A stretch of 64,000 nt of DNA from Kudoa neothunni (GCA_964304625.1 OZ199838.1:4241354-4305353); one strand, 5' to 3'. Shown: positions 539-25,055, numbered from the stretch's first letter. Made by a program: numbers and translations. Notes: generated by a model from the letters alone, not told the origin.

Positions 539-3025
539 CCCTCCAACGGATGAAAAAACGACCACCCTCCAACGGGCTTTGGGGTAAAAAAGACCCCAGA
601 TTTTTTTTAATTTAATGTATGCAGAAAATTATTATAAACTTATGAGGGAAATATGGGAAAATTCTGCCTAAGTAACGCTGAGAAAATAATCAATTACTTC
701 ATAATTAATCTTCAGTAATCCTCTTCGGCAAGATTAAGCAGATATCGCGATAAATCGTTTTTATAACGTATAATATGTTTAGTCTTATTTGAAATAATGA
801 AAAATAACATTTTAGTAAAAAATAAAAGATAAAATATTTTCAAGGGTCCCTAATAAATTTGGTTTATATTAGCTAGCAATTTAGACATTTATTTGACGAA
901 TGGGCGCGACAGTAGAAACTTCCACATTTTGAGCATTTGGATGAGGTTTTCTTATCGTTTTCACGAGGACAATGTTCACATCTTCGTTTAGAAGTATTTG
1001 AATCTGCAAAGTTGTATGTTTCCATAGAAGTTGGATGAGATCTTTTTGAACATTTTTTCATTTGGGAATTTCTCTCCAAAAGAGGTTTATACAACTCTCC
1101 AGCCATTTCTTTCAGAAAATCACGTCTCAATTTTGTGGAATCGTTAAATATGTGTTTATATAGACAAAATGAATTTATCAAAGTCAAATCCAACATATTA
1201 TAAAAGACCACCATGGGCCAGCGTCGATTAAATCTGCGGACCGAAACGGAAGCCAACATCCGATCCACGGTATCTACTCCTCCTTTGGAACCATTATAAT
1301 CCACCATTGTTTCAGGCTTTTGTTTATGTGTATCGTTGGTTATGTTGGTGTTGGTTGTTCCTGAGGATAGGAGAATCACCGCTCTTCTTTTTTTGTTGAC
1401 ATATGAAGTGATCATATATTTATCAAAAAATATAAACATAGTGCTGAATAAGGAACGATTTCTAGACGGAAGAACACACGGTGGTAAATCTCTCTTATTG
1501 TGTCGAATTGTTCCAAGATATGTCAGACGTTTGTCTAACAGCTTCTCGGCTAGTCTAAGGGAAGAGAAAAAATTATCTGCAACTATAGTTCTTCCTGAGT
1601 TATACAAGGGAGCTGTAAGGGAAAGCACAATATTCTCACCAACACCACAGTTTTGGCTAGCTTGAGTTCCGTTCTTTCCTAGATAGGGAGAAATGTTTAC
1701 AACATATTTGTGGACTGGATCGACAGCTAGGAAAAACTTTAGGTCATATTTCGCCGGCTTCATCGGCATATATTGTCTAAATGAGCATCTTCCTCTAAAC
1801 GAGACTAACTGCTCGTCAACGGTAACATTTTCACCGGGGAAAAAACATATAGGTAGAGTCTGGATCCACATGTTCCATATGTTGCGAATTGGACAAAATT
1901 TATCCAATTCTCTTCTTTCAGATCTGGTGCTTGGATTATCAAAATGAATACATCGTAGAATTTGGCGAAAACGATTAAATGAAAAGATTTCGCGATACAT
2001 CTCTCTCCCTTCCTTTATACTAAACATTTCTAAAAGAGGTTGCTCTCTGTCTTTGTAGACAGCCATCAAAATTAGTGTTCCGAAAAATCCTCTTAATTCA
2101 ACGTCGTCTAAATCATTCCATAAATCAGAAAAGTGTAATTTCCCGTGAACGTTTGTTTGTTTTATTATTTCCTGGCAAATTTCATCAGTGAAGAATATAA
2201 AAAAACAGTCCAACACGTTTTTGACTCTTTGTATGCAATAAGCTGTTGGCCCAGGTCGAGGATTCATGATATTCTCCTTCAGCATTTTTGATGGAGGTGG
2301 CTTATTCAATGTCCAAAGTATTCCGCTTTTGCTTGTCGTAGAATCCGCAGGATGTTCGCAATCTGATGTATCATCGGATTCTTCGGAATATTCAAGAACG
2401 GTTTCATCAATGTCGCTACTTAAAGGTTGATATTCATCGCTAAAATCCTCAGATGGTGCCATGATTATCTCAATGTGCGCAACAAACGATAAAATTGGTG
2501 TATATTTCGCGTTAACTCTCATATACGGTCCTAAGGCTTAAATTATCTATAGCTTATTTTGTAGGGGATTATTTATTGCTAGTACACGGAGGTAATATGT
2601 TAATTTTGTTTGTATTTAGCTAATAAACATTGACCTTGCGGTATTCATATAAACGATGGTTACGATATGTTGCGATTACATACTTAATCGGATTACGGCG
2701 GATTATATTGATTAATAATTGCTGAATTTGACAGTATTTATTAGGCAGATTTTTTTTTAAATTTCCAAATCATCTTATAATAATTTTCTACATACGTCAA
2801 ATCAAAAAAAATCTGGGGTCTTTTTTACCCCAAAGCCCGTTGGAAGATAAAAATTTTGTTCGATAAGAAATAATCAATATTCCACATAAAGATTTTTATA
2901 AATCTATTTATTAAAATAATTTAGGAGAATAGACGAAATTTTAAGTATCCCAGATAATTATAAAATATTCTATGGACAAATTAAAATCGTTTTGGGGTCT
3001 AAAAGACCCCAAGCCCGTTAGAGGG
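539..3025 (-). mobile_element. Full-length piggyBac DNA transposon (PB1)
   Basis: TTAA at 535-538 and 3026-3029. Termini CCCTCCAACGG and CCGTTAGAGGG (1 mismatch). Long subterminal inverted repeats (~565-640 vs ~2775-2846). Palindrome GGGGT-N7-ACCCC at 581-597, 2815-2831 and 2994-3010. Confidence 0.95.
873..2522 (-). CDS. piggyBac transposase, uninterrupted ORF (likely start ATG 2462)
   Basis: Acidic N-terminus, DDD triad (VTVDEQL, VADNFF, GGVDTVD), RRWP motif, and C-terminal Cys-rich domain CEHC...CSKC...YCRAH...CLNC. Confidence 0.95.
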   Translation of the reverse strand: MRVNAKYTPILSFVAHIEIIMAPSEDFSDEYQPLSSDIDETVLEYSEESDDTSDCEHPADSTTSKSGILWTLNKPPPSKMLKENIMNPRPGPTAYCIQRVKNVLDCFFIFFTDEICQEIIKQTNVHGKLHFSDLWNDLDDVELRGFFGTLILMAVYKDREQPLLEMFSIKEGREMYREIFSFNRFRQILRCIHFDNPSTRSERRELDKFCPIRNIWNMWIQTLPICFFPGENVTVDEQLVSFRGRCSFRQYMPMKPAKYDLKFFLAVDPVHKYVVNISPYLGKNGTQASQNCGVGENIVLSLTAPLYNSGRTIVADNFFSSLRLAEKLLDKRLTYLGTIRHNKRDLPPCVLPSRNRSLFSTMFIFFDKYMITSYVNKKRRAVILLSSGTTNTNITNDTHKQKPETMVDYNGSKGGVDTVDRMLASVSVRRFNRRWPMVVFYNMLDLTLINSFCLYKHIFNDSTKLRRDFLKEMAGELYKPLLERNSQMKKCSKRSHPTSMETYNFADSNTSKRRCEHCPRENDKKTSSKCSKCGSFYCRAHSSNKCLNC

Positions 3026-3029
3026 TTAA

Positions 3030-5211
3030 CCTGATTTTGAAAGAATATATTGGTGTCTGTTGTCTTGTGTATCTTGATGATATAATTATATTCAGTAAAG
3101 ATTTGGAAACTAACAAAAATGACGTGAGGAAAATTGTTACATTATTAGAGTTGTATAACTTGAAAATTAATAACGAAAAATCAGTTTATTACAAAAGCGA
3201 AGTTACATTTTTGGGACATGTTATCAATGCTGATGGAATCAAACCAGATAAAAATAAAGTGAAAGCAATTAAAAATTGGCCTACCCCAACGAAAATTGTT
3301 GAATTACAATGTTTCCTTGGTTTGCTTAACTATTATAGAAGATTCATTGATAAATTCTCTAAAATTTCGAATCCTCTGTGTCGTTTGTTACGGAACGACG
3401 TACCGTGGAATTGGTCGCCAGAATGTCAAAAATCATTTGATATGCTAAAAAAGAAATTAATGGAATGTGTATTGTTGGCACATCCGAATTGGAATGAATC
3501 ATTTATTTTGGATACTGATGCCAGTAATCAATCTATTGGAGCAGTTTTGTCGCAAGTAATTGATGGGGAGGAGCGAGTGGTCGCTTTCGCTAGTAGATCG
3601 TTATTAGATCGAGAAAGGAATTATAGTGTTACGAGAAAAGAACTCTTGGCTCTGGTTCATTTTATAAATCATTTCAAATTTTACCTCCATGGAAAAAAAT
3701 TCTTAGCGAGAACTGACCACCATGCGTTGAAGTGGCTATTGTCTTTTAAAAAGCCAGAAGGTCAGGTAGCTAGATGGTTGGAGCATTTGAGTCAATACGA
3801 ATTCGATGTTGTTTACAGAGAAGGTAAGATGCATGGAAATGCAGATGCTTTATCTCGAGTTCCTGAAATAACCCAAGCTTTGGCTCTATCGATACAAGGA
3901 TTATCAAATGATGTTATTATCAATAGACAACGCAATGACGCCATTCTGAATAAAATTATCGGCTGGATTGAGAGTAATCGAATGCCAAAGGTTCCTAAAG
4001 AGTTGGATAAACGGATACAAACATTATGGCTGTTGAGGAAATGCTTACGCTTGGATAATAGTATTCTATGTAGAGAATTTGTTGACCCTAAAACAAAGGA
4101 AGTTACATTACGTGTTGTGATACCTGAAAGCTTAAAATCAATGATATTGGAGTTGGCACATGATAATGTTACAAGTGGTCATCTAGGACATGAAAAAGTT
4201 GCCCAAAATATACGCAGAAACTATTATTGGCCATTACAAAATGTGGATATAAAAAATTGGTGTCAATCCTGTGAAATATGCGCTCGGAGGAACCGACCCA
4301 CCAGAAAGTTTGTATCAGAAATGGATACAAGTGTGTCAAGTTATCCGATGGAACGGATTGCTATTGATATGGTTGGACCGTTACCCACTACATATAAGGG
4401 GAATCGATTCATTTGTGTAGTTCAAGATTATTTTACAAAATGGGGAGAAGCCATTCCTATGAAGGACCAAGAAGCACATACTGTGGTCAGGAAGTTAACG
4501 GGTGCTGTATTTTCAAAATTTGGACTCCCATCGGTAATTCACACTGACCAAGGAACAAATTTTGAATCGAAACTTTTTCAAAATATGTGTAAAATGTTCG
4601 GCATATCAAAAACAAGAACATGTGCATTTAACCCAAAATCGGATGGGATGGTAGAAAGACTGAATCGAACGTTGATTGATATGGTGAGCAAGCTTGTCCA
4701 TAAGGACAACGAGTGGGATACCTTATTACCTACAGTGATGATGGCTTACCGATCATCAACCCATAGTTCAACTGGATATTCTCCAAATTATTTGATGCTG
4801 GGAAGGGAAGTACGAACACCACTTGAAACGATATCTCAACTAAACGCACATAATTATTCACATGATGACTATGTTAAATGCATTGGAACTGATCTGAGAC
4901 TGGCGAAACAAATTGCATTGGATAACCTCAAAGTTAATTTGGGCAGGACTAAGACTGCCTACAATAAAAAAGCCTATGGAAAACTTTATAACCCAGGTGA
5001 AAAAGTTTGGTTGGTCATTAATAATAGACAAAGTAAATTGGAACCATATTACAAAGGCCCCTACGTAGTTAAAGAAAAATTGTCTGACTCTGTCTATAGA
5101 CTAGAGGGACAAGGTAAAGTTTTGGTGACTAATTTTGATAAATTAAAACCCTTCATTCAACGACAGTTGATAGAAGACAGTTTTGAAGAGGATGCAATGT
5201 TACCAAGGTGA
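3030..5211 (+). mobile_element. Ty3/gypsy LTR-retrotransposon pol fragment (C-terminal RT, RNase H, integrase); no gag, protease or LTR seen
   Basis: YLDD; RNase H (LDTDAS, YSVTRKE, TDH, ADALSR); HHCC finger; integrase core (AIDMVG, HTDQG, VERLNR); GPY motif. Domain order RT-RH-IN. Confidence 0.95.
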
Positions 5212-5289: not shown

Positions 5290-8200
5290 CTAACAGGGAG
5301 TTTGGATTTGATGTTATTTCCGTTTCATTGGATTGGGAATCTAGGTCAATGTGGTCTGGTACGACTGGTTTTTCAAAAGTAAAAAACTCGACAATTGAAG
5401 AAGCTGAAGCTTGGCACCAGACCGGCTTTGGATCAGTAATTTCCCTAACACATTTCTTGGTATTTAGCTTGAAGAGGGATCTGAGTCTGATTGCTTCGTT
5501 ACTGGACCAGGGATTTTTCTCAGAGTTGTTGTTTTGATTGGTATTTTGAGGAGGGTAGTTCAAGTTTTCCTGCAATTTTGCATTAGGATTTGAGGTGGGA
5601 TTTGGTCTTCATTCGGAGGAATGTCAGGTTGTTTCTTGCTGGATTTGTTGGTTTTAAAAGGGAGGTTATTCTTGGCAGATGTAGGGTTGTTATTTGCATT
5701 TTGTGGTTTTAAAGGTGGCTTAGGGACAAAGTATTGGTCTAAGAGTTTTGCGTGTTTAGTTGATATTTTGATAAACTCTTCATAGAAATCGTCAACATCA
5801 AAGTCTTTATCTCCAAGTTTAACATTTAGGGCGAGCAACTCATCCACACAGTTCTTGAGTTTCTCAGAACGTTTCTCTTTTTGGAGCAATAGTCCTCAGT
5901 AGATTTGATTGTTTTATCATCCGTATCGTTGTTGGGGGGGGGGGGGGGGGGTTGGGAAGATTGTTGTGACTTAGAAACATTATCATTTATAAGGATATCA
6001 TCAGCATCTTCAGTTTGTTCGTAATTTTGAGATGGGATGCTTGTAACAGTGACAGATGAGTTGGATTTCCTAGATTTCCCAGATTTCGTAATATTAGGAC
6101 GTTCCACAGGTGGCAATTTGTATTTTGATTTGTTTTTTCTTAGGATGGAATCAATTACGACATTATCACCGGATATGGGGGTTTGAGAAGCTTGAGGGAT
6201 GTCAATTAGTGTTGCTAGTGGAGAATTTTCAATGACTTCAGTATTTGTAGTATTTTTGGGATTTAAGGCCGATTCCAAATTAAACATGGGATTGGAGCTA
6301 GGTAACTCTTCAACTGTGTGTCCCACTGATTTTAGGGCATTATAAAGATCATCAAATTGTTGAGAGTCTATCAATGGGTCATTTCTATAGCCACCTTCTG
6401 ACATGTTGTCAGCAATTGTTGTAACATCTTGATTTTGTGAGGAAAATTGGGTTGTTTCTGTATCTTCAATAACAATAGCCGCATCAGTACTCTTGTTGGG
6501 ATTTATCATGTAGAGGTTCTTCTGTTTTGATATAAAATCATTAACATCTTGAGAGTTTAGAGGGATAGATTGACTTATTGTAATAGGAGGGTCATCATCC
6601 GATTTTCTTGAGAATTTGATTTTCTTCGCCTTGGGATGGTACAGTATTGAGGTGTTTGATTTGCTACTGTTTGGAACATTGTTGGACGGATTTTGACGCT
6701 TTTGAGCATTTGCAGAATCTTCGGTAAGAGGCTCAAGAGACGAAGCTGGTTGCTGATTTAAGTTTGGCTCATTTAACTTAACATTAGTATTTTGCGGACG
6801 GATATTAAGTTTAGAAATTATTGTAGGCACAAACTTGCGCTTTTTAGAGTGCGAATTAGTATTATTGGTACATTTAGCATTAATTGAATTAGACGATTTA
6901 GATAGTTTGGCTGAATTCTTAACATTACCTGGTTTTGGCGCTTTGCTGATAGAATTTGCGGACTTTATTGGATTTAAAGACTCAGTTGGCTTGGAATTCT
7001 TCTTCGTTTTAAGAGATTTAGCGGCTTTTACATTAGATTCACTTAAATTGGTACGATTATTAAGATTAACATTATTATTGCTTAAATTATTTAGTTTGGA
7101 AGAATCATTAGTGTTAACTGAGTTAATTGTATTAACAAAATTAAAACTATCACTATTTAAATCACTTATTTTAAGGGAATCGTTAGAATTTGCCAAACTA
7201 TCGGGGTTATCATTTAAAATAATCATTTTAGAAGAGAAGTTTGCGTTAGAATTAGAATTAGAGGGACTAGTTAAACTAATTGTATTTTCTAGATTGGCAT
7301 TCACATTATTAGAAGTGTTAGAAACATTATAATTAACATTTTCGGCAGTATTAACTAGATTATTAGTTGAGTTAACTAGATTAGTTGTACTAAAAGTAAA
7401 AATATTAGAATTTAAATTGTTAGAATTAGAAAGATTATGCAAAGTAATAGAATTAGTAGTGTTTTTAGTTTTAATAATCTTATTTAAGTTTTCTGAGGTG
7501 CTCGGGTTGTTATTAGAAGTATTAAAAGTAAAGTAAAAGTAAAAGAGTTAAAATTTTGCTGGTCAATGCCATCATTTTTGTTAAAGTCACGTGAAATTAA
7601 CTCCAATGAAGTATTGGCTAGCTGCGCGTTGTCCGAATTATCGTTAGATTTAACATTAAAATTAGAATCGGACTTGGTTGCTGTTTTTAAAGGTTCGTGA
7701 ATGTTAGAATTAGTTTTATTAACACTAGAACTAGAATTAAAAGAGTTAAAAGATGACAAATAGTTGTCATGGTTAAAATTGTTAGAAATTAAATTGGAAT
7801 TTAGATTAAGATTAGGATTAGCGCCGACAGTAGGATCACCTAGATATTTTAAAACTAAATTATCATATGCGGCTTTATCAAATTGCTTATTATTAAAATT
7901 AGAATTAGGTGCGATATTATTAATGTTAGTGTTAATATTAAAATTATTTTTAACATTACCAGTATTAAAATTAGATTGCGTGATTAATATTGGCTCAGAC
8001 TTACTGGGGATTAATGGTTTAAAACTGGTTGGCCATTCATCATCCGAAGAGATAGAATGATCATCATCAGAATCATTTAAAATTGAAATTGACGGTTTTA
8101 AAGTAGTATAACTGGTAGGATATTTCTCAACTACCGTGTATTTAGTATTTCATACAAAATATTAATATCTTTAATCTTATCAACCTTATTGTTATTACTA

Positions 8201-9587
8201 TCATTAAAATTTGAATTAAGATTAGAATTTGAAGTTTTTTCATTAATATTAGCGCAGATGTCCTCCAATATGTCAACATCATTGACGTTTTCATAATTTT
8301 CGGCATCACAATCACTATTATAATTAGAATCTGGCGAACTTTCAATGATATTATTAACATTAATATCAATATTATCATTAGAATTATTATTGTTAAGTGA
8401 AACGTGAGGATTTAGAGATTTAACAACATTGTTAAGATAAAAATAATCAATATTATCATTTGCGTCGTTATTATTATAAGAATCTGGCGTAACAGGCATT
8501 AAATGAGAGTCTAAAGAGACATTAAGTGGGTTTACTGGGACATGTAAAGGAGAATCTGGATTTAAAATAGGAGTAGAGCTGGCATTTAATGTAAAATTAG
8601 GTAAAATAACTCCAACCGGCTGACGCGGCGGAGACGACTTAATCTTCGGGAAGCAGGCACTAACACATACTTCCGCATAAGGAAATGGATTTTCGGGGAA
8701 TTCTGACTTATGCTCATTTTTAGATTCATTAACTAAACTATTTTAATCGTTTAAATTAGAATTAGAATAAACTTGCTCAGCTATTGAATAGGTATTAAGA
8801 TGGGTATTAGGATTAAGATTAGAATTTAAAGAATTATCGTTAGCTTGCTGATTAAAAAGATTAGAATTAATATCAGTTGGAACAGTATTAAAAGAATTAA
8901 TATTAGGAATATTAAGATAACTACTTGCTGAATCATCAGGAACGAGGTTAATATTATGATTAATTTTAGAATGTTCTGGAGTCAGATTTAGATTAGGATT
9001 AAGATTAAGATTATGCGCGGATTTAGATAAAACATTTTCAGAGTTTTTAACAACTTCTGAAGCAACTGGAGAAAAATTATAGTGCAATTTAAGGTAGTCT
9101 AAATATTTCTGACTCAATTTAGGAAATAGCTTAAGATCCGCCTCAATGTAGATCGAGCCATCCTTTTCCAAGAGCCTCTGGGAAGTCCCCAGAGTCAATT
9201 TCAGCCTGAAAAACCTCGTAAAGTTCATTCAGGATGACTGACCGGCTTAATAAATTCTTATTAAATGCCTCATTCAGGCGTCTACGACGGGGGCGATTAT
9301 CTTCAGGCACTGATTCCAACTGAAGGGAATAAATTTTTAAACGTTCAGCGTTACGAACGTATTTAGCAACTATTTTACAAGCTAACGGTAACTTGTGTGA
9401 TTTATCTTTCACTTGTAAATAGGCTGTATAGAAGATTAACATGCACCGAGGCATGTTTTCGGTGGAAAACCCACTTAACTTACTCATATGAAATTAAAAG
9501 TAGCGTCGATAGATTGCATGTATGATGAATAATATGAATTACCTGTTTAGGAGAGAAAATGGAGCCTGGTTGCAAAAAATAAAAACT
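5290..9587 (-). mobile_element. Non-LTR retrotransposon copy E1: 5' part only, frameshifted, truncated before the RT core
   Basis: ORF pieces from ATG 9487 are colinear with and homologous to E2 (MSKLSGFSTENMPRCML, QAEIDSGDFPE, HSKKRKFVPTII, KNKSKYKLPPV, EAIRLRSLFKLNTKKCVREITDPKPVWCQASA). The left boundary against the gypsy sequence is approximate. Confidence 0.85.
5934..5952 (+). repeat. G19 homopolymer (poly-Pro on the minus strand inside E1)
   Basis: Directly visible run of 19 G. Confidence 0.9.
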
Positions 9588-9623
9588 ACAGCGAAACCAA
9601 GTTTCGATCTTGGGACCTCAGGG
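9588..9623 (-). repeat. Exact 36-bp copy of the tRNA-iMet 3' half (positions 39-73 plus T) at the E2/E1 junction
   Basis: acagcgaaaccaagtttcgatcttgggacctcaggg is identical to 17120-17155. Confidence 0.97.
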
Positions 9624-9739
9624 GTAGAAATAACAAATACTAATGCTAATTCAGTTATAACTATTCAACAGTTTGAGTTTTGAGGGATTTTGCAAGTTGG
9701 ATGGAATTTGATGGGATATTGAGATTGGTGAATTCCTAA

Positions 9740-12700
9740 TCAGTGCGAAGCGTTGCCAGATACGTGGTGTTTGTACACCGAGTGGCTCGCTTCCAGAATT
9801 GTGGTGGTGATCTGTTTCTTCAGCCTTTTGGTCATCTTTTTGGAGAATATAAGCAGCTTGAAGACTTCAGTATTCGAGGCCAAGTGAGAACCAAGGGAAC
9901 CAAAGATTAGGGCTTTAGATTCCACGGTGAAACCAAGTTTCTCCAAGAAAAGCTTCTCATCAGCATAGGTGGTTGATTTGTGCTCTCTGACTTCTAAAAG
10001 TCGTTCGTTCGAGGATTCAAATGGAATGGACAGATCTATCATCAGCACGGATTGTTTCCATTCGTTCATTAAGACGAGATCAGGTCGACGAGGGAAACCT
10101 TCAATAAACGTAGAGTCCACGAAGAGACGTTGGTTTTTCTTGATTTTCAGTTTGATTTTTTCAGCAATGAGATTGAGGATTTGATTGTGGCGGGACATGA
10201 TTTGTTCCGTGTTGAACTTGCATCCATTGAGTATGTGTGAAGTGGTTTCGTGTGCCATTGGACAATGACGGCAAGACGTGATGTTGGTTTTCTTGATTTT
10301 GTACATATTCATCATTGTTGGGAGTAAATTCAACCAGCATGTAATGCAAACTGAGCCGTACTTACTTTAATATGCCCAAAATGGATCCATGTGTTGGAGC
10401 ATTTATCATCCGCAGACGAACAGCAGGCCTTCCCTTGATCAGGTAGTGACTTCCATGAGACAAAATTGCGATTTTGGAGATGCCAGCGAAGTTTTTTAAT
10501 GAGGGTTGGACGGACGTTGGAGATGAAAGCACTAGGAGGACGTTGTAGGGATGTGTTATCGAGTTCCAAATTATAATCCGTGTCGCGGTCGCATTTAAAC
10601 CTGACTTTAATTTGTTTCCTATACGGTCGTAAACTGGAGAAGAGTGTGGTGATATCCTTATTATTGACAGCAAGTTTGTCGTCAGAATTGAGGAAATCAG
10701 CGGCATTAGGAAGGTTAGAGTTTTTGGGGATACGGCTCTAATGGACTTGTGTAGTGAATCAATGGCCAAATTGTGAACATTATCATCAGCACTTTGGATT
10801 GTTTAGAGCGGAAGAGACCCGTAGTGCTCTATAATCGTCTACTATATTCCTTAGACCAAGGCCACCCAACTTAGTGGGGGTGTAGAAGAATGACTTATTA
10901 ACTGCCGTAGGAAACTTAAACCAATTACATACATGAGAATTTATAAATGAATTAAGTGAGTTTAACTCTTCAATACGGAGTTGAGTAGTTTTCATACGGA
11001 AGTCTAACATTGGAAGGAGATAGATTTTCAAAATGTGTAATTTCATGTAAGGGAAAGAGAAACGAATTTGAAATTTTTGTTAGTTTGTCTTTGAAAACAG
11101 AAATTTGTGGTTTTAAATCTTGGAAGGATTGTAGATTTTTGTTAGTTCCAAGATACTTATAAAATTGCACATTTGTCATATCAGGTATAGGTTGATCATT
11201 TAAAACAAGGGGAGAGAAGAAGGCTGGATCATTAATTATCAGTTGTTTAGTCCTAGAATGGTATTTTGCTTGTATGGACCTGCACTTTGATGTATTAGTC
11301 TTCATTTCCACAATCTTCAAATAATTCTCAAATTCTTTCAGCACTTTCTCCGCCTTCTCTCTGGAATCGGACACAAAAACCAAATCATCAGCGTAGGCGA
11401 GAGTGGAAATTGCAGGACCGTCTTTAATGTTGTATCCAACGTCGTGCTCTTCCATTAAAATTAAAAATGGATCGATCACCAGATTAAAAAGCAGCGGTGA
11501 CATTGGACACCCTTGTCTTACTCCCCTACCATTCATAGTGTGATTAACAGTATTTTGGTTCTGGTCTCTCACCAGGTTGTAGGAGTTGGAGTAAAGGAAA
11601 CGAATTAAGTGGATAACATCTTGAGAAATACCTCTAACACTTAGTTGATGTAAAATAAGCCAGTGGGGGACAGAATCGAATGCCTTGCGCAAATCGATCC
11701 ATGTTAAATGAAGGTTGGATTGTCTCCTACGGAAATCGTTTAAAACTTCTTGGAGGGTGAAGGCGTGTTCAACACAACCTTCACCAGGTTGGAATCCTTT
11801 CTGGCTTGGGTAAAGTTCAATCTCTGGTCGAATGCGGGAATAAAGGGCGGACATAAAGATGCGGTACAATGTTTGCGTTATACAGATCGGACGATAGTCT
11901 AATGAGGAAGATGGGTCAGGATTTTCAGTTTTAGGGATTAAGATCATTCTTGATTCCAACCAGCGCTTCGGTACTTTGTTGGCAGAGATGAATTTATCGA
12001 ACATAGGAAGGAGAATGGATTCAATATTCGGGATAGACTTCCAAAACTTCATATGGATGCCGTCCGTACCTGAAGAAGTGTCAGCCTTGGCTCTCTGGAC
12101 AGCACTCAAGACATTTTGAATGCCAACGCTAAATGGCGAGGGGTTATCTGGATATATTTGAGTTAATTGTGGATCAGAAGAGGAAGAGGAAGGATTTATT
12201 GAGTTTGGAGTTTTTGGGTGAATATCGGCATTGCCATCAAAGTCAAACTCTTCGGAATCTGTGCAGAAGCCATTTTTTTGATTGTTATTGTTAGAAGGAA
12301 GGGGGTCGTTAGAAACATTAATGAGAACAGATTTATCGGGATTTTGTGGTGAGGAATTAATTTTTGAGTTTGAAACAGGTCTGATACCAGTGATGTAGGA
12401 CTGGGAGGCAAGATGCTCTGGAACGGTTGGAGTGTCAAAGGTAAGCGAGTTTACAATGTCTTCTGCAGATGCCTGGCACCATACGGGTTTCGGGTCAGTA
12501 ATTTCCCTCACACATTTCTTCGGATTAACTTTAAAAAGGGCCCTCAGACGAATAGCTTCATCTGTATTCCATGGACCCTTTTCGGTGGTATCTTCCTTAG
12601 GATTTTTATTAGTGACGGGAGGAGAGTTGTTATCAACAGCATTGTCAGGCTCAACAATGATAATTTCATCAGAACCATTATTGGTGTTTGAACTAGGATT

Positions 12701-15700
12701 ATTTTGGGAGTTGTGTGATTTTTTTGAGTTAGGTTCAAAAGGAAGGTGAGTTTTGGGAGGGTTATTGGGAAGATTATTTTTTGGTTTAGGAATAAAATGA
12801 AGATTCAAAGACTTAGCTTAGCATGGATAGTGGCAAGACGAATAAAATCATCATAATAGTCATCAATGTCTATATTGTTGTCGCCAAATTTAACGTTTAA
12901 TGCAATTAATCATTTGCACAAGCTTTTAATTTGTCGGCGCGTTTTTCTTTATCATCCACATAGTCTGGGTCATCTTTGTTTTTATTGGATTTTATATTTT
13001 GCTGTGAATTTGGACATTGGGATTTAGTTTTGGAATTTACATCATCCACAAGAATATCGTCATAGATCTCAGTTTTACGCCTATCCTGTGACGTAATGAC
13101 TGGCTTTTTCTTTGGTTTTTGGACTGACGAAACTGAAGGACATTGAGAAGTACAAAAATTGTCTGGATGAGCTTTAGTTGATCTTTTCGTTGAGATTGGT
13201 GGCCTGTTAACGGGAGGTAGTTTGTATTTTGATTTGTTCTTGTTTAAAATTGAATCAACTAGAATGACATCTTGCGACAAAGGGGTTGAAAAAGATTCTA
13301 AATGTTTCGGGACCTTTTCATTATAAACCGGATTTAATGCTGATTTTAGGTTAAACATTGGATTGGGACTATTAAAATTAACACAGGAAAGATCATTATT
13401 AGTATAAGAATGTTCAATAATTGGAATATCGGATTGATTATCTGAGACTAAAGGGAATTCCTCACTACAAACATATCCTGCTGATTCTAGAGCTTTTCCT
13501 AATTCCACAAAATCTTGTGTGGTACAATAATTTGGATTATCTTGTTCATCACTATCGTTACTCAGGGATTCGATATTTATTGGTAATTGTTTAGATGAAT
13601 CAGGAACTATAGATATAGATATAGATTGGGATGGTGGGGATGAATTTTGGGAATCAAGGGTGGTAATTTTATTAAAAGGATCAACATTCTTTTGCTCGCT
13701 GATAAAATCATTAATTTCTTGTGAATTAAGTAAGATAGGTTGAGTTAGAGGAGAATTTTCATCATCCGAGTCTCTTGTGAATTTAATCTTTTTAGCTTTC
13801 GGATGATCAAGATGGAAAAATTTGATGTGGTATCCAAATCAATGTTCTTGTCAGAATAAGTCCTCTTTTTAGCGCTTTTAGACTTTAATTGAGGTTCAAG
13901 TGTCGAAACTGGTTGCTGATTTAACTGATTATATGCATTGTTGTTTTCATTATTCATCTCATTATTACTGTTATTATTATTTGCATTTTTATTTTTTTTA
14001 GTTGACTGAGAATTAAGTTGTTTAGTGATAATTGTTGGGACAAATTTGCGCTTTTTAGAATGTTTGGTTGATAGGTTGTTTGATTTAGAACTATTTTTAA
14101 TAGCTGAGGAATTAACAGGTGATTTAATTAAATTAGATTTATTATTCTCGGTTATTTGTTCAGAAGTATTGTGTGATTTAGTGTTTGTAGTGTTGACATT
14201 ATTCGTCGACTTTTCATAAAAGATGGCAATATCTTCATTAATATCAGTTAAATTCTCAATTTTTTCCTCATCCGAAATATTATTAATGTAGTTAAAATTA
14301 CTATTATTATCATTATTATGTGAGGAGTTTGATACGACTGAATTAGAAATTAAATCTACATTGATGTTTTTAGAATTTGAAGAGTTGTCAGCGTTTTTAT
14401 CATTATTATCGGTTAATGAGGTATTATCATGAGGATATGGTTTATTATTTAGTGAGATATCAGAATTAGCATTATTATTATTATTTAGATCAGAGCTGGA
14501 TGAGCTCTCGGTAGTATAATTGTTATTAAAATTAGAGCTAGATGGGCTCTCGCTGCTATTAATGTTATTAGCATGTTTAGAGGAAGTATGGATCAAAGTG
14601 GAATTAGAATTATTAGTTTCAACTGAGTTAGAAAGTGGATTACAGTTATTGCCAACCGGATTGGTTAAAATCTCGTTAGAACTTGTTATTTGGTCATTTG
14701 AGTTAATTTTAGAGTTATTATTATGATCATGCTGTTTATTTAGATTAGTTATACTTGGTTTATTGTTAAAATTATTGGGATTTGTATGACTTGTTAGATT
14801 AGAATCATCAACGATGGTCGAACGATTGTTAACGAAGTTAGTAGAACGGGAATTTTTAGAATTTAAGTCAAAGTTATGGTTAGGATTAGTATTACAGTTA
14901 GATTCAACAGCAGTAGTTGATTTATCGTTCATTACATTCTCAGTTGAGTTATCATTAATAGTAGGATTAGTTAAAATGTTTATTTCATTAGAATTAGTGT
15001 GATTACTAGTGTTAGAGTTATTAGTAGGAGTATTAATGGTTGAATGGGTTGATAAAGTAGGATTAAGATTATTGTTAGAATCTTGATGTAAAGTTGCTTC
15101 ATTGGCAATTGATTGTTGTAGTTTAATAAAAGAATCCAGTAAAGCACAATTATCCTCTTGTGAGGAAACTGTACTTTCTTGTTTTAAGGGAGAATTTTTA
15201 AGATTAAGTTCATTGAGTTGAATATCATTTGGCGCAGTGTTAATATTAGGAGATAATTTCTCACTAGCAACTATTGATTCATTATTGTTTCCTGTATTAA
15301 TTTTAATTGAATTACATATCAAGGAAGGGTTAGTCTTCTTTGAGGAAAAAGATGAAAGGTAGTTAGTATGATCCGGTTGATTGTTTACATGATTAATATT
15401 AGATGAATCATTGTTATTGTTACTAAAGGTATTATCATTCAAATATTTTTTAACTAGGTCATCATATGCTGATTTGTCAAATTGTTTATTTGCATTTGTA
15501 TTTGTGTTTATATTAAGATTTAGATTTGGATTTAAGTTAGTTGGATTAATGGAGTTTTTATGAGTATCTTTAGGTAATGTATTAACATTTGAATTATCAC
15601 TATAATTATCTGGTGATTGTTGTGATATAGATTCAGTTTTAAGTGGTTTAAACGAAGGAAGTGGCCATTCGTCGTCTGATGACGCTTCATCACGACACGA

Positions 15701-17008
15701 AAACGAAGGTTCACTGTCCGAATCGTAAACTTTAATATATTGTGTGTTAATTTTTGAATTATCATTATCGTTATTTGGATATGATTTAACTATTGTGTAT
15801 TTTTTATCTGAAGCTATATTGATATATTTAATCTTACGATTAGAAAAGTCATTATTAGAAGTAGGAGTAGAATTGTTATTATTATTAGTGGATAAAGTTT
15901 TTGCGCGCATTATTTCATTAATGTCTTCGAGAATCGTTACATCATCTACCTCTTCTTCCATAACAGAGTTGTCAGAGTTTAAATTATCATCATTAAAATT
16001 TCCATTATTAAAATTGTTATGATTTAAGTCATAGATTGGCTCAATATTTAAATACTCTGAAAGATCGTCAATACAACAATCATCAACAGTATTTTCAATA
16101 TCAGCATTAGTAGCATTAGTAGCATTAGAAGGTGAATTAATGTTAGTGTTAGATTTAATTGGTAAATTATTTAAATTTGAATTTTCTGGAATAACTCCTG
16201 AACATGGTTGATTGGGTAGTGATGATTTATATGCATCTGGATAACATTTATTAAAGCAGTATCCGGCGAATGTGAAAGGATTATTGGTTAAATCAACAGA
16301 GCGAGTCTCAATAATTGCGCCTACTAATGAGTTTTCATAATTGGTTTTATTAATGTTAGTATTATTATCGTTAGTGTTATTATGTGAGTTAGAGTTAGAG
16401 TTAGAACTAGAATTTGGATTAGTATTAAGGGATGTGCAAGTAGGGGATAGCGAATTGACAAAAGTTCCCACAATAGGGTCATTATGGGTTTGCAAATGAT
16501 TGTTAATGTTTACTATTGGATTAGTTATATTAAGTGGATTAATTCTAGAAAATTTAATGTTTTTAGAAGAATCTAACAAACTAGGATCAAAGTTGTAATG
16601 CAATTTAAGATATTCAGAATATTTGTGATTTAATTTAGGAAACATTTGCAAATCCGACTCGATGCAAATGGAGCCATTCTTTTCTAAAAGTGACTCTGGA
16701 AAGTCTCCAGAGTCAATTTCAGCCTGAATTACGTCAAATAACTCATTCAGGATGACTTCACGACTTAACAAATTCTTCTTAAGAGCATCATTTAAGCGTC
16801 TACGTCGAGGTCGATTCTCCGATGGCGTTTGTTCCAGCTGTAGCGCATAGATTTTAAGGCGTTCAGCATTTCTAACGTATTTAGCTACTACTTTTCAAAC
16901 TAAAGGCAGCTTATGGGACTTGTCCTTAACTTGTAAATAATAGGCAGTATAGTAAATCAACATGCATCTGGGCATGCTTTCTGTGGAAAACCCACTTAAT
17001 GCGCTCAT
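9740..17008 (-). pseudogene. Disrupted single ORF of E2 (~2,400 codons): novel N-domain, Asn/Ser-rich region, RT, CCHC, REL endonuclease
   Basis: ATG 17008 (MSALSGFSTESMPRCML) is in frame with ORF 13745-16771 through one TGA at 16895-16897, where E1 has Cys. Further frameshifts or stops separate ORFs 12906-13508, 10970-12808, 10786-11046, 10330-10569 and 9740-10333. Confidence 0.85.
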
Positions 17009-17105
17009 AGTGATTATAATTTAGCAGCAATAGAAAGAAGACACAAGGATAAACGAATTACTTGTAACCAAAGAGCAAAAAAAGTACAGCAAAAATGCAA
17101 AAATC

Positions 17106-17111
17106 GAAAAA
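17106..17111 (-). terminator. Pol III oligo-T terminator about 10 nt after the tRNA, within the E2 5' end
   Basis: Minus strand reads GCTG TGAAATTCG TTTTT. An equivalent TAG TTTTT follows the half-tRNA in E1 (9581-9585). Confidence 0.6.
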
Positions 17112-17120
17112 CGAATTTCA

Positions 17121-17192
17121 CAGCGAAACCAAGTTTCGATCTTGGGACCTCAGGGTTATGAGCCCTGCGCGCTTCCTCTGCGCCATCTCGCT
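17121..17192 (-). tRNA. tRNA-iMet: Initiator tRNA-Met (CAT)
   Basis: AGCGAGA TG GCGC AGAGGAA GCGC G CAGGG CTCATAA CCCTG AGGTC CCAAG ATCGAAA CTTGG TTTCGCT G folds into a full cloverleaf. Eukaryotic initiator hallmarks are present: A1:U72, three G:C pairs at 29-31/39-41, A54 and A60. Confidence 0.95.
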
Positions 17193-22903: not shown

Positions 22904-25055
22904 GGTTTCGGGTATTTTAGCAATAGAGATAGCAGTCATGGATTTTTCCCTCTCCAACGTTGGTTATTTGGTTCTGGAAAATATATATTTATTGAAGAGA
23001 GAGCATGAAAAATTAATGTTTTTTACAAAACTTAAGATTGCTTCCAAAAGAGCAGATTTATGGAAAATGTAATTTACAGATGAGCTTACAAAAAGATCAA
23101 GTAATTAATGGGTATGGCTTCAGATGTAATGGATGTCGAAGAAGATTGAGCTTCCGCAAAGGAACTTTTTCTCAATGTTCCGAGCTATTGTTATGGCGAA
23201 TATTTATGCTAATATATTTTGATGTTTTTGACATTCAAATGTCGTATAACATAACATGCTCATGAAACAATTACAAATTGGAAGGATCACATTTGATATC
23301 CGTCCCCCAAATAATCCTATAACATTATCTAGATTAACCGCGAGCTAATCGTTTGTTTTCCATCACTAACACTAATACCGCACCATGAGGATTATCGACT
23401 CACAAACACAATAAATAAGGATTAAGTCGTTATTTACAAACAACCACACAACAATGATTGCACCAAGAAAGTCATTCAATAAAATTTTAGGTGAAGAGAA
23501 AAATTCCATCAATTATCTCATTGAACGGGCATTCTTGAAGAGCCTACTAATTGCAGTAAATGTGGTGGAATCAGATTTTCGATCCACAGAAAAAATTGGC
23601 GATGTTGTGCAAAGTCTTGCCGGAAAGAAATCTCTATTTTTGACTATACGATCTTCAAGAATATTAAACTCAAAGTTAATGATTTCATGGAGTTGGCTTA
23701 TTATTGGTTAGTGGGTGTAAAAACTCTTAACTTGATCACTATCACTGATCACTCCTCTCAAACTACCACTAACTATTCCCATTATCTTAGACAAATGATG
23801 GCCGATAGTTTAGGATTTGAGGACATCATAATTGGAGGAGAAAACACAGTCAGAGAAATTGATGAGTCCAAGTTTGGTAAAATAAAGCATAACAGAGGCC
23901 ATGGTGTTAATGGAGCATGGGTTCTTGGAGATGTCGAAAGGACACTCGAAAGAAGAATGTTTCTAGTGGAGGTCCCTGATAGAACCGCTGAAACTCTAAT
24001 AAAAAAAATAAAAATCTATGTTAAACCAGGCTCAATTATCATCAAAGACTGTTTCAAAAGCTACGCCACACTTCATAATTTCTACACTCATCTCACTGTT
24101 AACCACAGTATAGAATATGTAGATAATGTTTCGGGAGCTCACACCAATACTATTGAGAGAACTGGGGTGCCATAAAATATCGAATATCTCCCAGAAATAG
24201 AACGTCATCGGTTAATGAGGATGGAACTGTTCGTATGGATCGCATTAATGAATCTCACGGTGAATTTCAATGGAGAAAAAATCAACATGACTTATGGAGA
24301 GGTTTTATGTAATCTCTAAAAATTAATCTACAATCAGATCACTCTTATCAGCGTTTTGTTGTGTTTTTTCTAAAATGTGTTTTTATAATAAATATAAGAA
24401 TTATTTTATTGAGGATTAAGGGGGCTTAGACCAAATTTCAGCCAATTGGAAAAACTATGTGAGAGAGATCTATATAGAATATTTCAATTCAAATTGCGTG
24501 ATTATGGGAGATGAAAATGTTATTGTTCAGATCGTCGAATCGAACATATGCAAGAGAAAATACCACCGAGGAAGAGTGCTAGTGAATCAGAAAATGCGGA
24601 TTGTCGGTGGTGCCGATGGAAACAACAACATTTTTCAAGTATTGACCGAAATAAGAAATCAGTCTACAATAGAATCCATAATTACTCAGTATGTTGCTCG
24701 TGAATCAATAATATGGACTGACAAATAGAGTGGTTATAACTCTCTTGAGTCTTTGGGTTACGTGCACGAGTCTGCAAATCATAGTATTGAATTCAACGCC
24801 GTTGATGGCGCGCACACAAATAAGATCGAATCTGTTTGGGGAGCAACCAAAAGAAAGTTCCGCCACGTAACCAATAAGGTGTCAGACTTGATGGGATGGT
24901 ATTTATGTTCCAACCAATTAAAAAAAATTAAAGATGAACGACTTTCTATGTGTATAAAAACAATTGATAAAATATATTTGTATTAGAATCTATTATTATT
25001 GTTATTTACAAAATTAATATCTTTCATCCGATTATTGACGGAAATACCTGAAGCC
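22904..25055 (+). mobile_element. Decayed Merlin (IS1595-like) DNA transposon, outer element
   Basis: Imperfect TIRs GGTTTCGGGTATTT and AAATACCTGAAGCC. The transposase is split into an N-terminal Zn-ribbon part (23038-23290; FRCNGC..SFRKGTF) and a C-terminal part (24433-24986; KRKYHRGR, IWTD, NHS, HTNKIESVW). Confidence 0.75.
23295..24432 (+). mobile_element. Merlin (IS1595-like) transposon nested inside the outer Merlin
   Basis: ORFs 23454-23711 and 23687-24175 carry EIDESKFG, HNRGH, WVLG, VNHS and HTNTIE. Imperfect TIRs (...CCCCCAAATAATCCT and AGGATTAAGGGGGC...). Confidence 0.8.

What the first reader, a model, noticed from the sequence alone, without database searches (positions are those of the whole stretch)
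5290..17192. Site-specific RLE non-LTR retrotransposons that insert at the initiator tRNA and leave it intact
Seen (minus strand): complete tRNA-iMet (17192-17121), then element E2 (7.5 kb; RT + CCHC + REL endonuclease), then an exact copy of tRNA positions 39-73 (9623-9589), then a diverged relative E1. The E2 3' end has no poly(A) and joins exactly after the anticodon loop (CATAA|CCCTG). Both elements begin with an oligo-T Pol III terminator within ~10 nt of the tRNA end. Established: RLE elements such as R2/R4 (rDNA), NeSL and CRE/SLACS (SL RNA genes) and Utopia (U2) target multicopy RNA genes. Inference: this family cuts tRNA-iMet at 38/39 and regenerates a complete, re-targetable tRNA with its own terminator, so elements stack in tandem at no cost to the host, much as phage integration restores tRNA genes. 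Either a ~35-bp target-site duplication or an element-borne half-tRNA would give this layout. I do not recognise an RLE family with this target.
Basis: partly seen in the sequence, partly recalled or inferred. Interest (0 to 1): 0.92.

Follow-up and report, generated by a model that had tools for sequence, protein, structure and literature searches.

The report
Retrotransposons that rebuild initiator tRNA gene
Two jumping genes sit one behind the other directly after this small animal genome's only initiator-tRNA gene; they entered at the anticodon loop yet left a complete tRNA gene in front of them, and they belong to a family that does the same at 15 or more other tRNA genes, which shows that a site-specific parasite can live in an essential single-copy gene.

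Summary
On the minus strand lie an intact initiator tRNA gene (17192-17121), the 7.5-kb element E2 (RT, CCHC, restriction-like endonuclease; no poly(A)), an exact copy of tRNA 39-73 (9623-9589), and a diverged relative, E1.

Two corrections: E1 is a 3'-truncated remnant without RT, and E2's reading frame is broken in several places.

The layout is not chance. All 18 clusters of related RT genes in this 40-Mb genome were checked. Fifteen have a same-strand tRNA gene 1.6-4.7 kb upstream. In every locus I could read (Gln, Asn, Cys, Ser and six more), elements are separated by tRNA 3' halves that start at positions 36-39 and are followed by T-runs.

The iMet anticodon arm occurs once in the genome, so the target is a single-copy essential gene.

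E2 nests among tRNA-Asn-targeting elements, which implies a target switch. The family is sister to a clade with at least one U2-snRNA-flanked, Utopia-like member and lies outside named R2.

tRNA-specific RLE families were already reported (NeSL-1_TV, LIN15_SM, LIN25_SM). I found no description of this family or of target-restoring insertion into single-copy tRNA genes.

This scan has already reported the same family at other tRNA genes of this genome.

Whether the duplication comes from staggered nicks (favoured) or an element-borne half stays open.

The parts
17121..17192 (-). Intact initiator tRNA-Met(CAT) gene, the target; apparently the only one in the genome
   Evidence: ARAGORN; Rfam 59.2 bits; initiator marks read; unique in the genome
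17009..17120 (-). E2 5' leader: +1 T, 8-nt spacer, then T5 (17111-17107), CGA, T5 (17103-17099), GCA, T5 (17095-17091). Acts as an element-borne Pol III terminator for the rebuilt tRNA
   Evidence: Sequence; leader alignment A1; same T5-CGA-T5 motif in Asn-targeting relatives
13745..17008 (-). E2 N-terminal coding region: likely ATG at 17008-17006, a short conserved N-terminal peptide, then an early frame break and a 1008-aa N-rich open frame (13745-16771). No Pfam domain
12906..13508 (-). E2 open-frame piece (200 aa) between the N-terminal region and RT, in another frame
10970..12808 (-). E2 reverse transcriptase open frame (612 aa)
   Evidence: RVT_1 E 3e-33; 41% identical to the intact Gln-lineage protein, residues 904-1344
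10342..11055 (-). E2 thumb/linker region, shifted into another frame (frameshifts near 11045 and 10340)
   Evidence: tblastn of the intact relative against E2
9740..10333 (-). E2 C-terminal CCHC zinc knuckle and restriction-like endonuclease
   Evidence: Translation; 44% identical to Gln-lineage residues 1578-1770, a region that aligns to the CCHC+RLE part of solved R2 proteins
9624..9739 (-). E2 3' UTR, no poly(A), ends ...TTTCTAC; single copy in the genome
9588..9623 (-). Exact copy of tRNA-iMet positions 39-73 plus the following T: the duplicated 3' part of the target
   Evidence: 2x-depth unitig and one bridging contig
5306..9587 (-). E1: older diverged relative (73% nt identity in the first 560 nt). 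Own T5-A-T6 leader (9585-9574), N-terminal coding region only; 3'-truncated before RT
   Evidence: blastn/tblastx E2 vs E1; ORF list; no RT hit

Best explanation
E2 and E1 are two independent insertions of a tRNA-iMet-specific lineage of restriction-like-endonuclease (RLE) non-LTR retrotransposons. They belong to a family in which each lineage is specialised on one tRNA gene.

Inferred mechanism. The element protein nicks the antisense strand of the tRNA gene at the 3' edge of the anticodon loop (38/39 for iMet; 36-38 for other tRNAs). It then primes reverse transcription of the element RNA from that nick (TPRT, as in R2). The stretch from the nick to tRNA position 73 ends up on both sides of the insert. 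The upstream gene is therefore complete again, and the old 3' half is left behind the element.

The element's 5' end begins with its own oligo-T runs, which give the rebuilt tRNA a Pol III terminator. The complete gene at the head of the array can be hit again, so elements stack head to tail with the newest next to the tRNA.

I favour (about 55%) a second, sense-strand cut at 73/74, which gives a 35-45-bp target-site duplication. The alternative (about 30%) is that the RNA carries the 3' half at its 5' end and joins by homology.

Shown: the layout, the domains, the family-wide association with tRNA genes, the single-copy target, the element-borne T-runs and the phylogeny. Inferred: the cut sites, TPRT, the order of insertions and the harmlessness to the host.
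For: - Anatomy at the stated coordinates.
- The 36-nt half is 36/36 identical to the tRNA, while the adjoining E1/E2 sequence is only 73% identical. The half was therefore copied from the gene at E2's insertion and not inherited from an old tandem duplication.
- Genome-wide, 64 RT matches fall into 18 clusters. Fifteen have a same-strand tRNA 1.6-4.7 kb upstream, and 15 of 38 scored tRNA genes are occupied. Chance expectation is about 0.003 per cluster.
- Gln, Asn, Cys and Ser show the full layout with exact junctions. The Ser half is 45 nt because it includes the variable arm. Further halves lie at six other loci, and distal halves and elements are more decayed.
- Two other organisms show the same layout with their own tRNA-Gln and tRNA-Asn halves, including compensatory T-stem differences.
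- The RT and CCHC+RLE regions align to solved R2 proteins at E 1e-76 to 1e-55. The Gln lineage has intact 1748-aa ORFs.
- The initiator anticodon-arm pattern is unique in the genome.
- E2 nests in an Asn-targeting clade (SH-aLRT 96) and shares its T5-CGA-T5 leader. The two targets are alike around the nick (TAACC...AGGT).
- Long TSDs occur in related elements: R9 makes an 'exceptionally long' TSD (title cited in PMC13580325), and reptile Utopia makes 20 bp.
Against: - The iMet lineage itself gives only two insertions, both defective. E2 has frameshifts and E1 is truncated, so activity is not shown.
- No empty site, array terminus, RNA 5' end or cleavage assay was available, so the cut positions and TSD versus borne half are unproven.
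- A sense-strand cut would have to follow the tRNA 3' end at 35, 36 or 45 nt from the first nick, and at 159 nt in the U2-flanked sister element.
- In that sister element the two U2 3' parts differ mostly by compensatory stem changes. This fits an element-borne part or gene conversion better than a simple TSD.
- No DNA-binding domain was recognised in the N-terminal ~900 aa.
- The read runs laid on the junction come from a single sample and study, possibly the one the assembly was made from.
Confidence: 0.85

Rival explanations
1. Element-borne half. The transposition RNA starts at or upstream of tRNA position 38 and so carries 39-73 plus the terminator at its 5' end. Both DNA strands are cut near 38/39. 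The end of the cDNA pairs with the target, and the upstream gene becomes a chimera of host 1-38 and element-borne 39-73. This is the eukaryotic counterpart of phage attP sites that carry a tRNA 3' end.
For: - The duplicated part always ends at the 3' end of the RNA gene whatever its length: 35-38 nt, 45 nt for Ser, and 159 nt for the U2-flanked sister element.
- In L051 the two U2 3' parts differ mainly by compensatory stem changes.
- Every half read is followed by a complete canonical leader; no 5'-truncated copy was seen.
Against: - Oligo-T runs and a leader of only 60-115 nt lie between the half and the start codon. No promoter or ribozyme that would give an RNA 5' end at position 38 was found.
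- The first hop to a new tRNA (Asn to iMet) would build a chimeric, probably dead, copy of a single-copy essential gene. Yet the family has spread over 15 or more tRNAs.
- In L048 the first base after the tRNA end differs between neighbouring copies, and in L055 the bases just after it differ. That is where a 5' junction would lie under the TSD model.
Confidence: 0.3
2. No repeated targeting. One ancient insertion was followed by tandem duplication or unequal crossing-over of a [half-tRNA + element] unit, and the copies then diverged.
For: Identical neighbouring copies exist in some arrays (Gln e1, e2 and e5; the two Cys copies are identical for at least 400 bp), so recombination may add copies.
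Against: - E1 and E2 are 27% diverged, but the half between them is 36/36 identical to the gene.
- Arrays mix distinct lineages: Asn e1/e2, and C2 1.0 Mb 'd' versus the rest.
- Fifteen different tRNA genes carry elements of one family, which needs many independent site-specific insertions.
Confidence: 0.04
3. Tethering to the Pol III machinery, as in Dictyostelium TRE or yeast Ty3. The element lands next to any tRNA gene, and the downstream half-tRNA is a tRNA-derived 3' tail of the element.
For: All insertions are next to Pol III genes, and no sequence-specific DNA-binding domain was recognised.
Against: - Junctions are exact to 1-2 nt, inside the gene, at the same tRNA position in every lineage.
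- Each lineage keeps to one tRNA, also across species.
- The half always matches the local tRNA, not the tRNA of the nearest relative.
- The enzyme is an R2-type RLE, not an APE or integrase.
Confidence: 0.04
4. Assembly artefact: the 36-nt repeat misjoined E2 and E1.
For: The repeat is longer than the 31-nt word of the contig graphs, so most contigs stop in it.
Against: One contig of run X3 bridges 9427-9669. Depth on both sides is single-copy and the repeat is at 2x, as expected. The same layout recurs at many loci and in other organisms' assemblies.
Confidence: 0.02

Closest known systems
Utopia (U2 snRNA gene-specific RLE non-LTR retrotransposons, NeSL clade; Kojima & Jurka 2015, PMC4640811)
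   Same: - Single ORF with RT, C-terminal zinc knuckle and RLE; no poly(A); insertion at a fixed nucleotide of a small RNA gene; tandem arrays.
- In Phytophthora the authors found intact U2 genes, not 1-38 fragments, upstream of elements whose 3' side abuts U2 from nt 39.
- The sister clade of this family contains an element (L051) with a full U2 upstream and U2 39-end(+7) downstream.
   Different: - The target here is tRNA genes, one lineage per tRNA, in a genome where the targets look single-copy.
- The authors explained the intact upstream U2 by deletion in a U2 array, not by restoration.
- No N-terminal zinc fingers were detected here.
- Whether the family falls inside Utopia/NeSL as defined in Repbase could not be tested, because no reference sequences were available.
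tRNA gene-specific NeSL-related families NeSL-1_TV (tRNA-Pro, Trichomonas), LIN15_SM (tRNA-Arg) and LIN25_SM (tRNA-Glu) (planarian; PMC4640811, text and S6 Fig)
   Same: RLE non-LTR retrotransposons inserted at a fixed place inside tRNA genes, with the 3' junction followed by the tRNA 3' part and T-runs.
   Different: - Other tRNAs and other hosts, presumably with multicopy tRNA genes.
- In the LIN15_SM junctions shown, the retained tRNA part still includes the anticodon, so the site is upstream of the anticodon. Here it is on its 3' side.
- Restoration of the gene and a radiation over many tRNAs were not described.
R2 (28S rDNA-specific) and its relatives R8 and R9
   Same: - The best-matching solved structures are R2 proteins, over RT, thumb, CCHC and RLE.
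- The TPRT logic and the lack of poly(A) are shared.
[quoted passage not shown]
   Different: - The target is not rDNA.
- The family lies outside the named R2 proteins in the tree.
- No ZF/Myb and no HDV-like ribozyme were detected.
- As of 2016 only R8 and R9 were known as R2-superclade lineages with other targets.
Phage and integrative-element integration into tRNA genes; Dada DNA transposons; SLACS/CZAR
   Same: - Phage attP sites carry the tRNA 3' end so that the gene is restored (established knowledge).
- Dada transposons insert at fixed sites in tRNA and snRNA genes (PMC3706591).
- SLACS makes a long (49-bp, from memory) duplication in the spliced-leader gene.
   Different: - Phages use tyrosine recombinases.
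- Dada uses a DDE transposase with 6-7-bp TSDs in multicopy genes and does not restore them.
- None of these is an RLE/TPRT element at single-copy tRNA genes.

Membership tests
RLE-type (R2/NeSL group) non-LTR retrotransposon | Reverse transcriptase of the non-LTR type | tested here: met
   RVT_1 E 3e-33 in E2; RT aligns to R2 and LINE-1 ORF2 structures in the intact relative
RLE-type (R2/NeSL group) non-LTR retrotransposon | C-terminal CCHC motif followed by a PD..(D/E)xK restriction-like endonuclease; no APE domain | tested here: met
   E2 ORF 9740-10333 reads CRHC..H....C and RRPDL..IDLS..E..K. The homologous region of the Gln element aligns to the R2 CCHC+RLE. No Exo_endo_phos hit
RLE-type (R2/NeSL group) non-LTR retrotransposon | Insertion at one defined nucleotide position of a repeated or RNA gene target | tested here: met
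   3' junctions at tRNA positions 36-39 in five tRNA types and more; 15 of 18 clusters sit behind tRNA genes
R2 in the strict sense | Target is the conserved site in 28S rDNA | tested here: not met
   Target is tRNA-iMet
R2 in the strict sense | N-terminal zinc finger(s) plus Myb DNA-binding domain | tested here: not met
   No ZF or Myb family at E<0.1 in intact relatives. The N-terminal ~900 aa are poorly conserved. Pfam sensitivity only; no fold was predicted
R2 in the strict sense | HDV-like self-cleaving ribozyme at the 5' end | tested here: not met
   No ribozyme family in the leaders at permissive thresholds. The leader is only 60-115 nt
R2 in the strict sense | RT groups with R2 in a phylogeny | tested here: not met
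   The family plus a sister clade (SH-aLRT 99) lie apart from the named bird, fish and insect R2 proteins. Quick tree, no Repbase references
Utopia / NeSL clade | Insertion between nt 38 and 39 of U2 snRNA genes (Utopia) or in spliced-leader genes (NeSL) | tested here: not met
   Target is tRNA. A sister-clade element (L051) does sit at U2 nt 38/39
Utopia / NeSL clade | RT groups with Utopia/NeSL reference sequences | tested here: inconclusive
   It is sister to a clade holding one U2-flanked element. No Repbase Utopia, NeSL, R5/LIN, R4, CRE or HERO sequences were available
Utopia / NeSL clade | One to three N-terminal zinc fingers, or a Ulp1-like protease in nematode members | tested here: not met
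   No such Pfam hits
tRNA-proximal retrotransposons tethered by Pol III factors (TRE5/TRE3, Ty3) | APE or integrase; insertion at a variable distance outside tRNA genes of many kinds | tested here: not met
   The enzyme is an RLE; junctions are exact, inside the gene, with one tRNA per lineage

The most novel reading that the evidence does not exclude
A whole radiation of TPRT retrotransposons lives only in single-copy essential Pol III genes. Each insertion carries a portable repair kit: the gene's 3' part, or a duplication of it, plus an element-borne terminator. The occupied gene therefore stays functional and re-targetable. The elements would then behave like retro-homing selfish genes at essential loci, spreading from occupied to empty alleles, and can switch between tRNAs with similar anticodon-arm sequences (Asn to iMet). 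If the 3' half is carried on the RNA and joined by homology, this would be a natural RNA-templated 'cut, insert and repair the target' system in an animal.
Probability: 0.35. Interest if true: 0.9.

Novelty: new variant of a known kind. Interest (0 to 1): 0.8.

Why it matters
The accepted view is that site-specific transposons survive by choosing multicopy targets, so that a broken copy costs little (PMC3706591, PMC4640811, PMC5035012). Here the target looks like the only initiator-tRNA gene of an animal genome, and 15 of the 38 tRNA genes scored carry the same kind of guest. That can only work if the gene is rebuilt.

This arrives by reverse transcription at the same outcome that phages reach with integrases at bacterial tRNA genes.

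It also offers:
- a set of naturally retargeted R2-like enzymes with many different, short, conserved target sites, which matters for the current effort to use R2 proteins for gene insertion;
- a way to study how such enzymes change target, since the Asn and iMet lineages are close relatives;
- a test case for how selfish elements persist at a single locus.

It also corrects the picture that LINEs are nearly absent from myxozoans, if the host is indeed a Kudoa.

Tried and rejected
- **Ribozyme in the leader.** Rfam at gathering and at permissive thresholds found no ribozyme or other RNA family in the element leaders. The conserved leader motif TCTAACGATG is better read as start-codon context.
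- **Array termini.** I looked for a terminal half followed by native flank, to separate TSD from a borne half. At L041 and L043 the flank behind the last half is again an older element's 5' end.
- **Native trailers.** Those of unoccupied tRNA genes could not be fetched, for the same reason.
- **Host identity.** HSP70 gave only 'divergent animal'. The name Kudoa neothunni comes from an earlier scan note and is merely consistent with what I saw.
- **Sister-clade arrays.** L052, L053 and L054 are tandem, with spacers that end in T-runs in L052 and L053, but their target was not identified.
- **Literature.** Fell et al. 2025 (Nature), which surveyed site-specific retrotransposons, is not held, so I cannot exclude that it lists tRNA-associated families.
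- **Frames.** Only its unbroken RT frame was used in the trees.


Full report
**Observation.** ARAGORN and Rfam find one tRNA in the window, tRNA-Met(CAT) at 17121-17192 on the minus strand. Its sequence has the eukaryotic initiator marks: A1:U72, three G-C pairs closing the anticodon stem, and the T-loop ATCGAAA (A54, A60).

- An exact copy of positions 39-73, plus the next T, lies at 9623-9588.
- Between the two lies E2 (17120-9624, 7497 bp). It has an RVT_1 domain in ORF 10970-12808. ORF 9740-10333 has a CCHC knuckle and PD..D/E..K-type motifs. Its 116-nt 3' UTR has no poly(A).
- After the half comes E1.
- Both elements start with oligo-T runs: T5-CGA-T5-GCA-T5 from 9 nt after the tRNA's last base in E2, and T5-A-T6 from 3 nt after the half's last tRNA base in E1.

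**Corrections.**
- E1 matches only the first ~4.8 kb of E2 and stops at about 5306. It has no RT. It abuts a Ty3/gypsy pol fragment without LTRs (3037-5211, +) and a piggyBac-like transposase gene (873-2522, -). The far end of the array is therefore lost.
- E2 is full length but not intact. An intact relative's protein maps onto it in three different frames downstream of the RT start, and there are further breaks upstream. One read contig differs from the assembly by a T at 11135, so some breaks could be assembly errors.

**Is it real?**
- The tRNA sequence occurs once in the 40.26-Mb, four-contig genome, plus the one half. The initiator-type anticodon arm, allowing one mismatch, also occurs once.
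- In run X1 the 36-nt repeat is a separate unitig at twice the depth of its flanks. A 265-nt contig of run X3 bridges 9427-9669.
- All four runs come from a single sample and study, possibly the one the assembly was made from. This shows consistency, not independent confirmation.

**Is it chance?** No. The E2 RT finds 64 matches in the genome, which fall into 18 clusters. Fifteen clusters have a same-strand tRNA gene 1.6-4.7 kb upstream of the first RT, and 15 of the 38 tRNA genes scored are occupied.

Wherever I hold the sequence, the layout is the same: full tRNA, element, exact 3' half, next element.
- This holds for Gln (an array of nine), Asn, Cys and Ser.
- The half starts at standard position 38 in Asn, Cys and Ser, at 36-37 in Gln, and at 39 in iMet.
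- The Ser half is 45 nt because it includes the long variable arm.
- Halves of six further tRNAs separate or follow elements in the minus-strand arrays.
- Distal elements and halves are more decayed than those next to the tRNA. This fits insertion at the head of the array.

Contigs from two other samples carry relatives with the same layout:
- ERZ795007 has relatives 64-80% identical to the Gln lineage.
- ERZ28624939 has a relative 54% identical to E2.
- Each has that organism's own tRNA-Gln or tRNA-Asn half, with compensatory T-stem differences.

**What the elements are.**
- The Gln lineage has intact 1748-aa ORFs.
- RT, thumb, CCHC and RLE align to solved R2 proteins at E 1e-76 to 1e-55.
- The N-terminal ~900 residues are poorly conserved between lineages and hold no recognisable zinc finger or Myb.
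- The leader between the tRNA end and the likely start codon is only 60-115 nt: T-runs, then a conserved TCTAACGATG-like start context.
- No ribozyme was found.

In trees (quick searches, SH-aLRT support):
- The family is monophyletic (100).
- It is sister (99) to a clade of unnamed proteins.
- Both lie apart from named bird, fish and insect R2.

One sister-clade element (L051) has a complete U2 snRNA gene upstream, and U2 from nt 39 to its end plus 7 nt downstream. That is the Utopia site and the same architecture. The closest described relatives are therefore Utopia-like elements rather than R2 proper, but without Repbase references the clade is not fixed.

**The iMet lineage.** E2 groups with three tRNA-Asn-targeting elements from two species (96), as sister to Asn e2 (93). 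It shares their T5-CGA-T5 leader.
- The terminator therefore travels with the element.
- The iMet specificity arose by a switch from tRNA-Asn.
- The two targets are alike around the nick: 11 of 17 positions between 32 and 48, including TAACC and AGGT.
- E1 and E2 are 27% diverged in their alignable 5' 560 nt, yet the half between them is 36/36 identical to the gene. They are two separate insertions at the same site, and the half dates from E2's arrival.

**Mechanism.**
- Shown: the duplication of the tRNA part from the junction to position 73, the complete gene in front, the element-borne T-runs, and the RLE and RT domains.
- Inferred, by analogy with R2: an antisense-strand nick at 38/39 and TPRT.

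The open point is how the upstream copy of 39-73 arises.

I favour a sense-strand cut at 73/74, which gives a long TSD, for these reasons:
- Related elements make TSDs of variable and sometimes great length.
- A target switch then rebuilds the new tRNA automatically.
- The bases just after the tRNA end vary between lineages and even between neighbouring copies, as 5' junctions do.

Against it:
- The duplicated part always ends at the 3' end of the RNA gene, whether that is 35, 45 or 159 nt away.
- In L051 the two U2 3' parts differ mostly by compensatory stem changes.

Both points fit an element-borne 3' part, or gene conversion.

**What is known.**
- Kojima & Jurka 2015 (PMC4640811) already list RLE families specific for tRNA-Pro (NeSL-1_TV), tRNA-Arg (LIN15_SM) and tRNA-Glu (LIN25_SM).
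- They also noted intact U2 genes upstream of Phytophthora Utopia copies, which they explained by deletion.
- Kojima et al. 2016 state that only R8 and R9 had other targets in the R2 superclade.
- A 2026 R2 review does not mention tRNA targets.
- A 2026 myxozoan genome preprint calls LINEs nearly absent from Myxozoa.
- I found no description of this family, of an iMet target, or of restoration of single-copy tRNA genes. Fell et al. 2025 is not held.

**Host.** HSP70 places the genome among animals, with no close relative (at most 78% identity). An earlier scan note names Kudoa neothunni. Three chromosome-size contigs plus an 18.2-kb fourth contig fit the Kudoa mitochondrial size range (15.9-19.4 kb) and the reported chromosome-scale assembly. 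I did not verify the name.

**Earlier findings.** The scan has already reported this family at the Cys, Gln, Lys(CUU), Lys(UUU), Asn and Trp genes of the same genome. I re-derived the Gln, Asn and Cys layouts myself. Their readings agree with mine, except that some state the borne-half model as fact, which I regard as unproven.

**Verdict.** This is a real, non-random and well-supported feature. It is a new variant of a known kind: a site-specific RLE retrotransposon with a new target and a target-restoring design at single-copy genes. It is of high interest. The iMet copies themselves are decayed.

Noticed in passing
L051:4474-10097 (ENA ERZ25072490 contig): A sister-clade element has a complete U2 snRNA gene upstream (Rfam 145.7 bits) and U2 nt 39-end plus 7 nt repeated behind it. 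The two U2 3' parts differ mostly by compensatory changes in two stems, as if they came from two functional U2 variants.
   Followed up: partly
L052:6265-6502, L053:5866-6206, L054:4238-5001: Other sister-clade elements also stand in tandem. In L052 and L053 the spacer ends in ...AAACCCCAC...(C)AC TTTTTTT just before the next ATG. The target gene was not identified, and no Rfam or tRNA hit was found.
   Followed up: partly
window 873-2522 (-), 3037-5211 (+), 23687-24175 (+), 26099-26632 (-): Other mobile-element genes lie around the array: an intact-looking piggyBac-like transposase (DDE_Tnp_1_7, E 3e-70), a Ty3/gypsy pol fragment without LTRs that truncates E1, an ISXO2/IS1595-like DDE fragment, and a second piggyBac-like fragment.
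   Followed up: partly
window 7737, 8895, 9293, 9744, 11135: Read contigs differ from the assembly: 9 nt left out at 7737 (X1); ATG put in after 8895 (three runs); G>A at 9293; T>A at 9744; T put in after 11135 (X3). These are either assembly errors or polymorphism, and some of E2's frame breaks may be of this kind.
   Followed up: no
G000 C2:1008656-1036549 (L021 versus L012, L019, L037): One array holds two distinct lineages. Element 'd' groups with the Ser and C1 15.57-Mb lineages, and the others form their own clade. One tRNA gene can therefore be targeted by unrelated lineages.
   Followed up: partly
G000 C1:3000801-3009346, C2:1815662-1819449, C2:7764717-7773761: Three decayed RT clusters have no tRNA in the scored list upstream. 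Either the tRNA was not scored (only 63 of 2556 candidates were), or these are arrays whose tRNA is gone.
   Followed up: no
Leaders of all lineages (alignment A1), e.g. L045:4395-4412: A conserved motif, TG.TGATTCTAACGATG, ends in the likely start codon. It is followed by a conserved N-terminal peptide (C..L...V..YY..YLQ.K-like). The 5' UTR is therefore very short for an element that needs its own promoter.
   Followed up: partly
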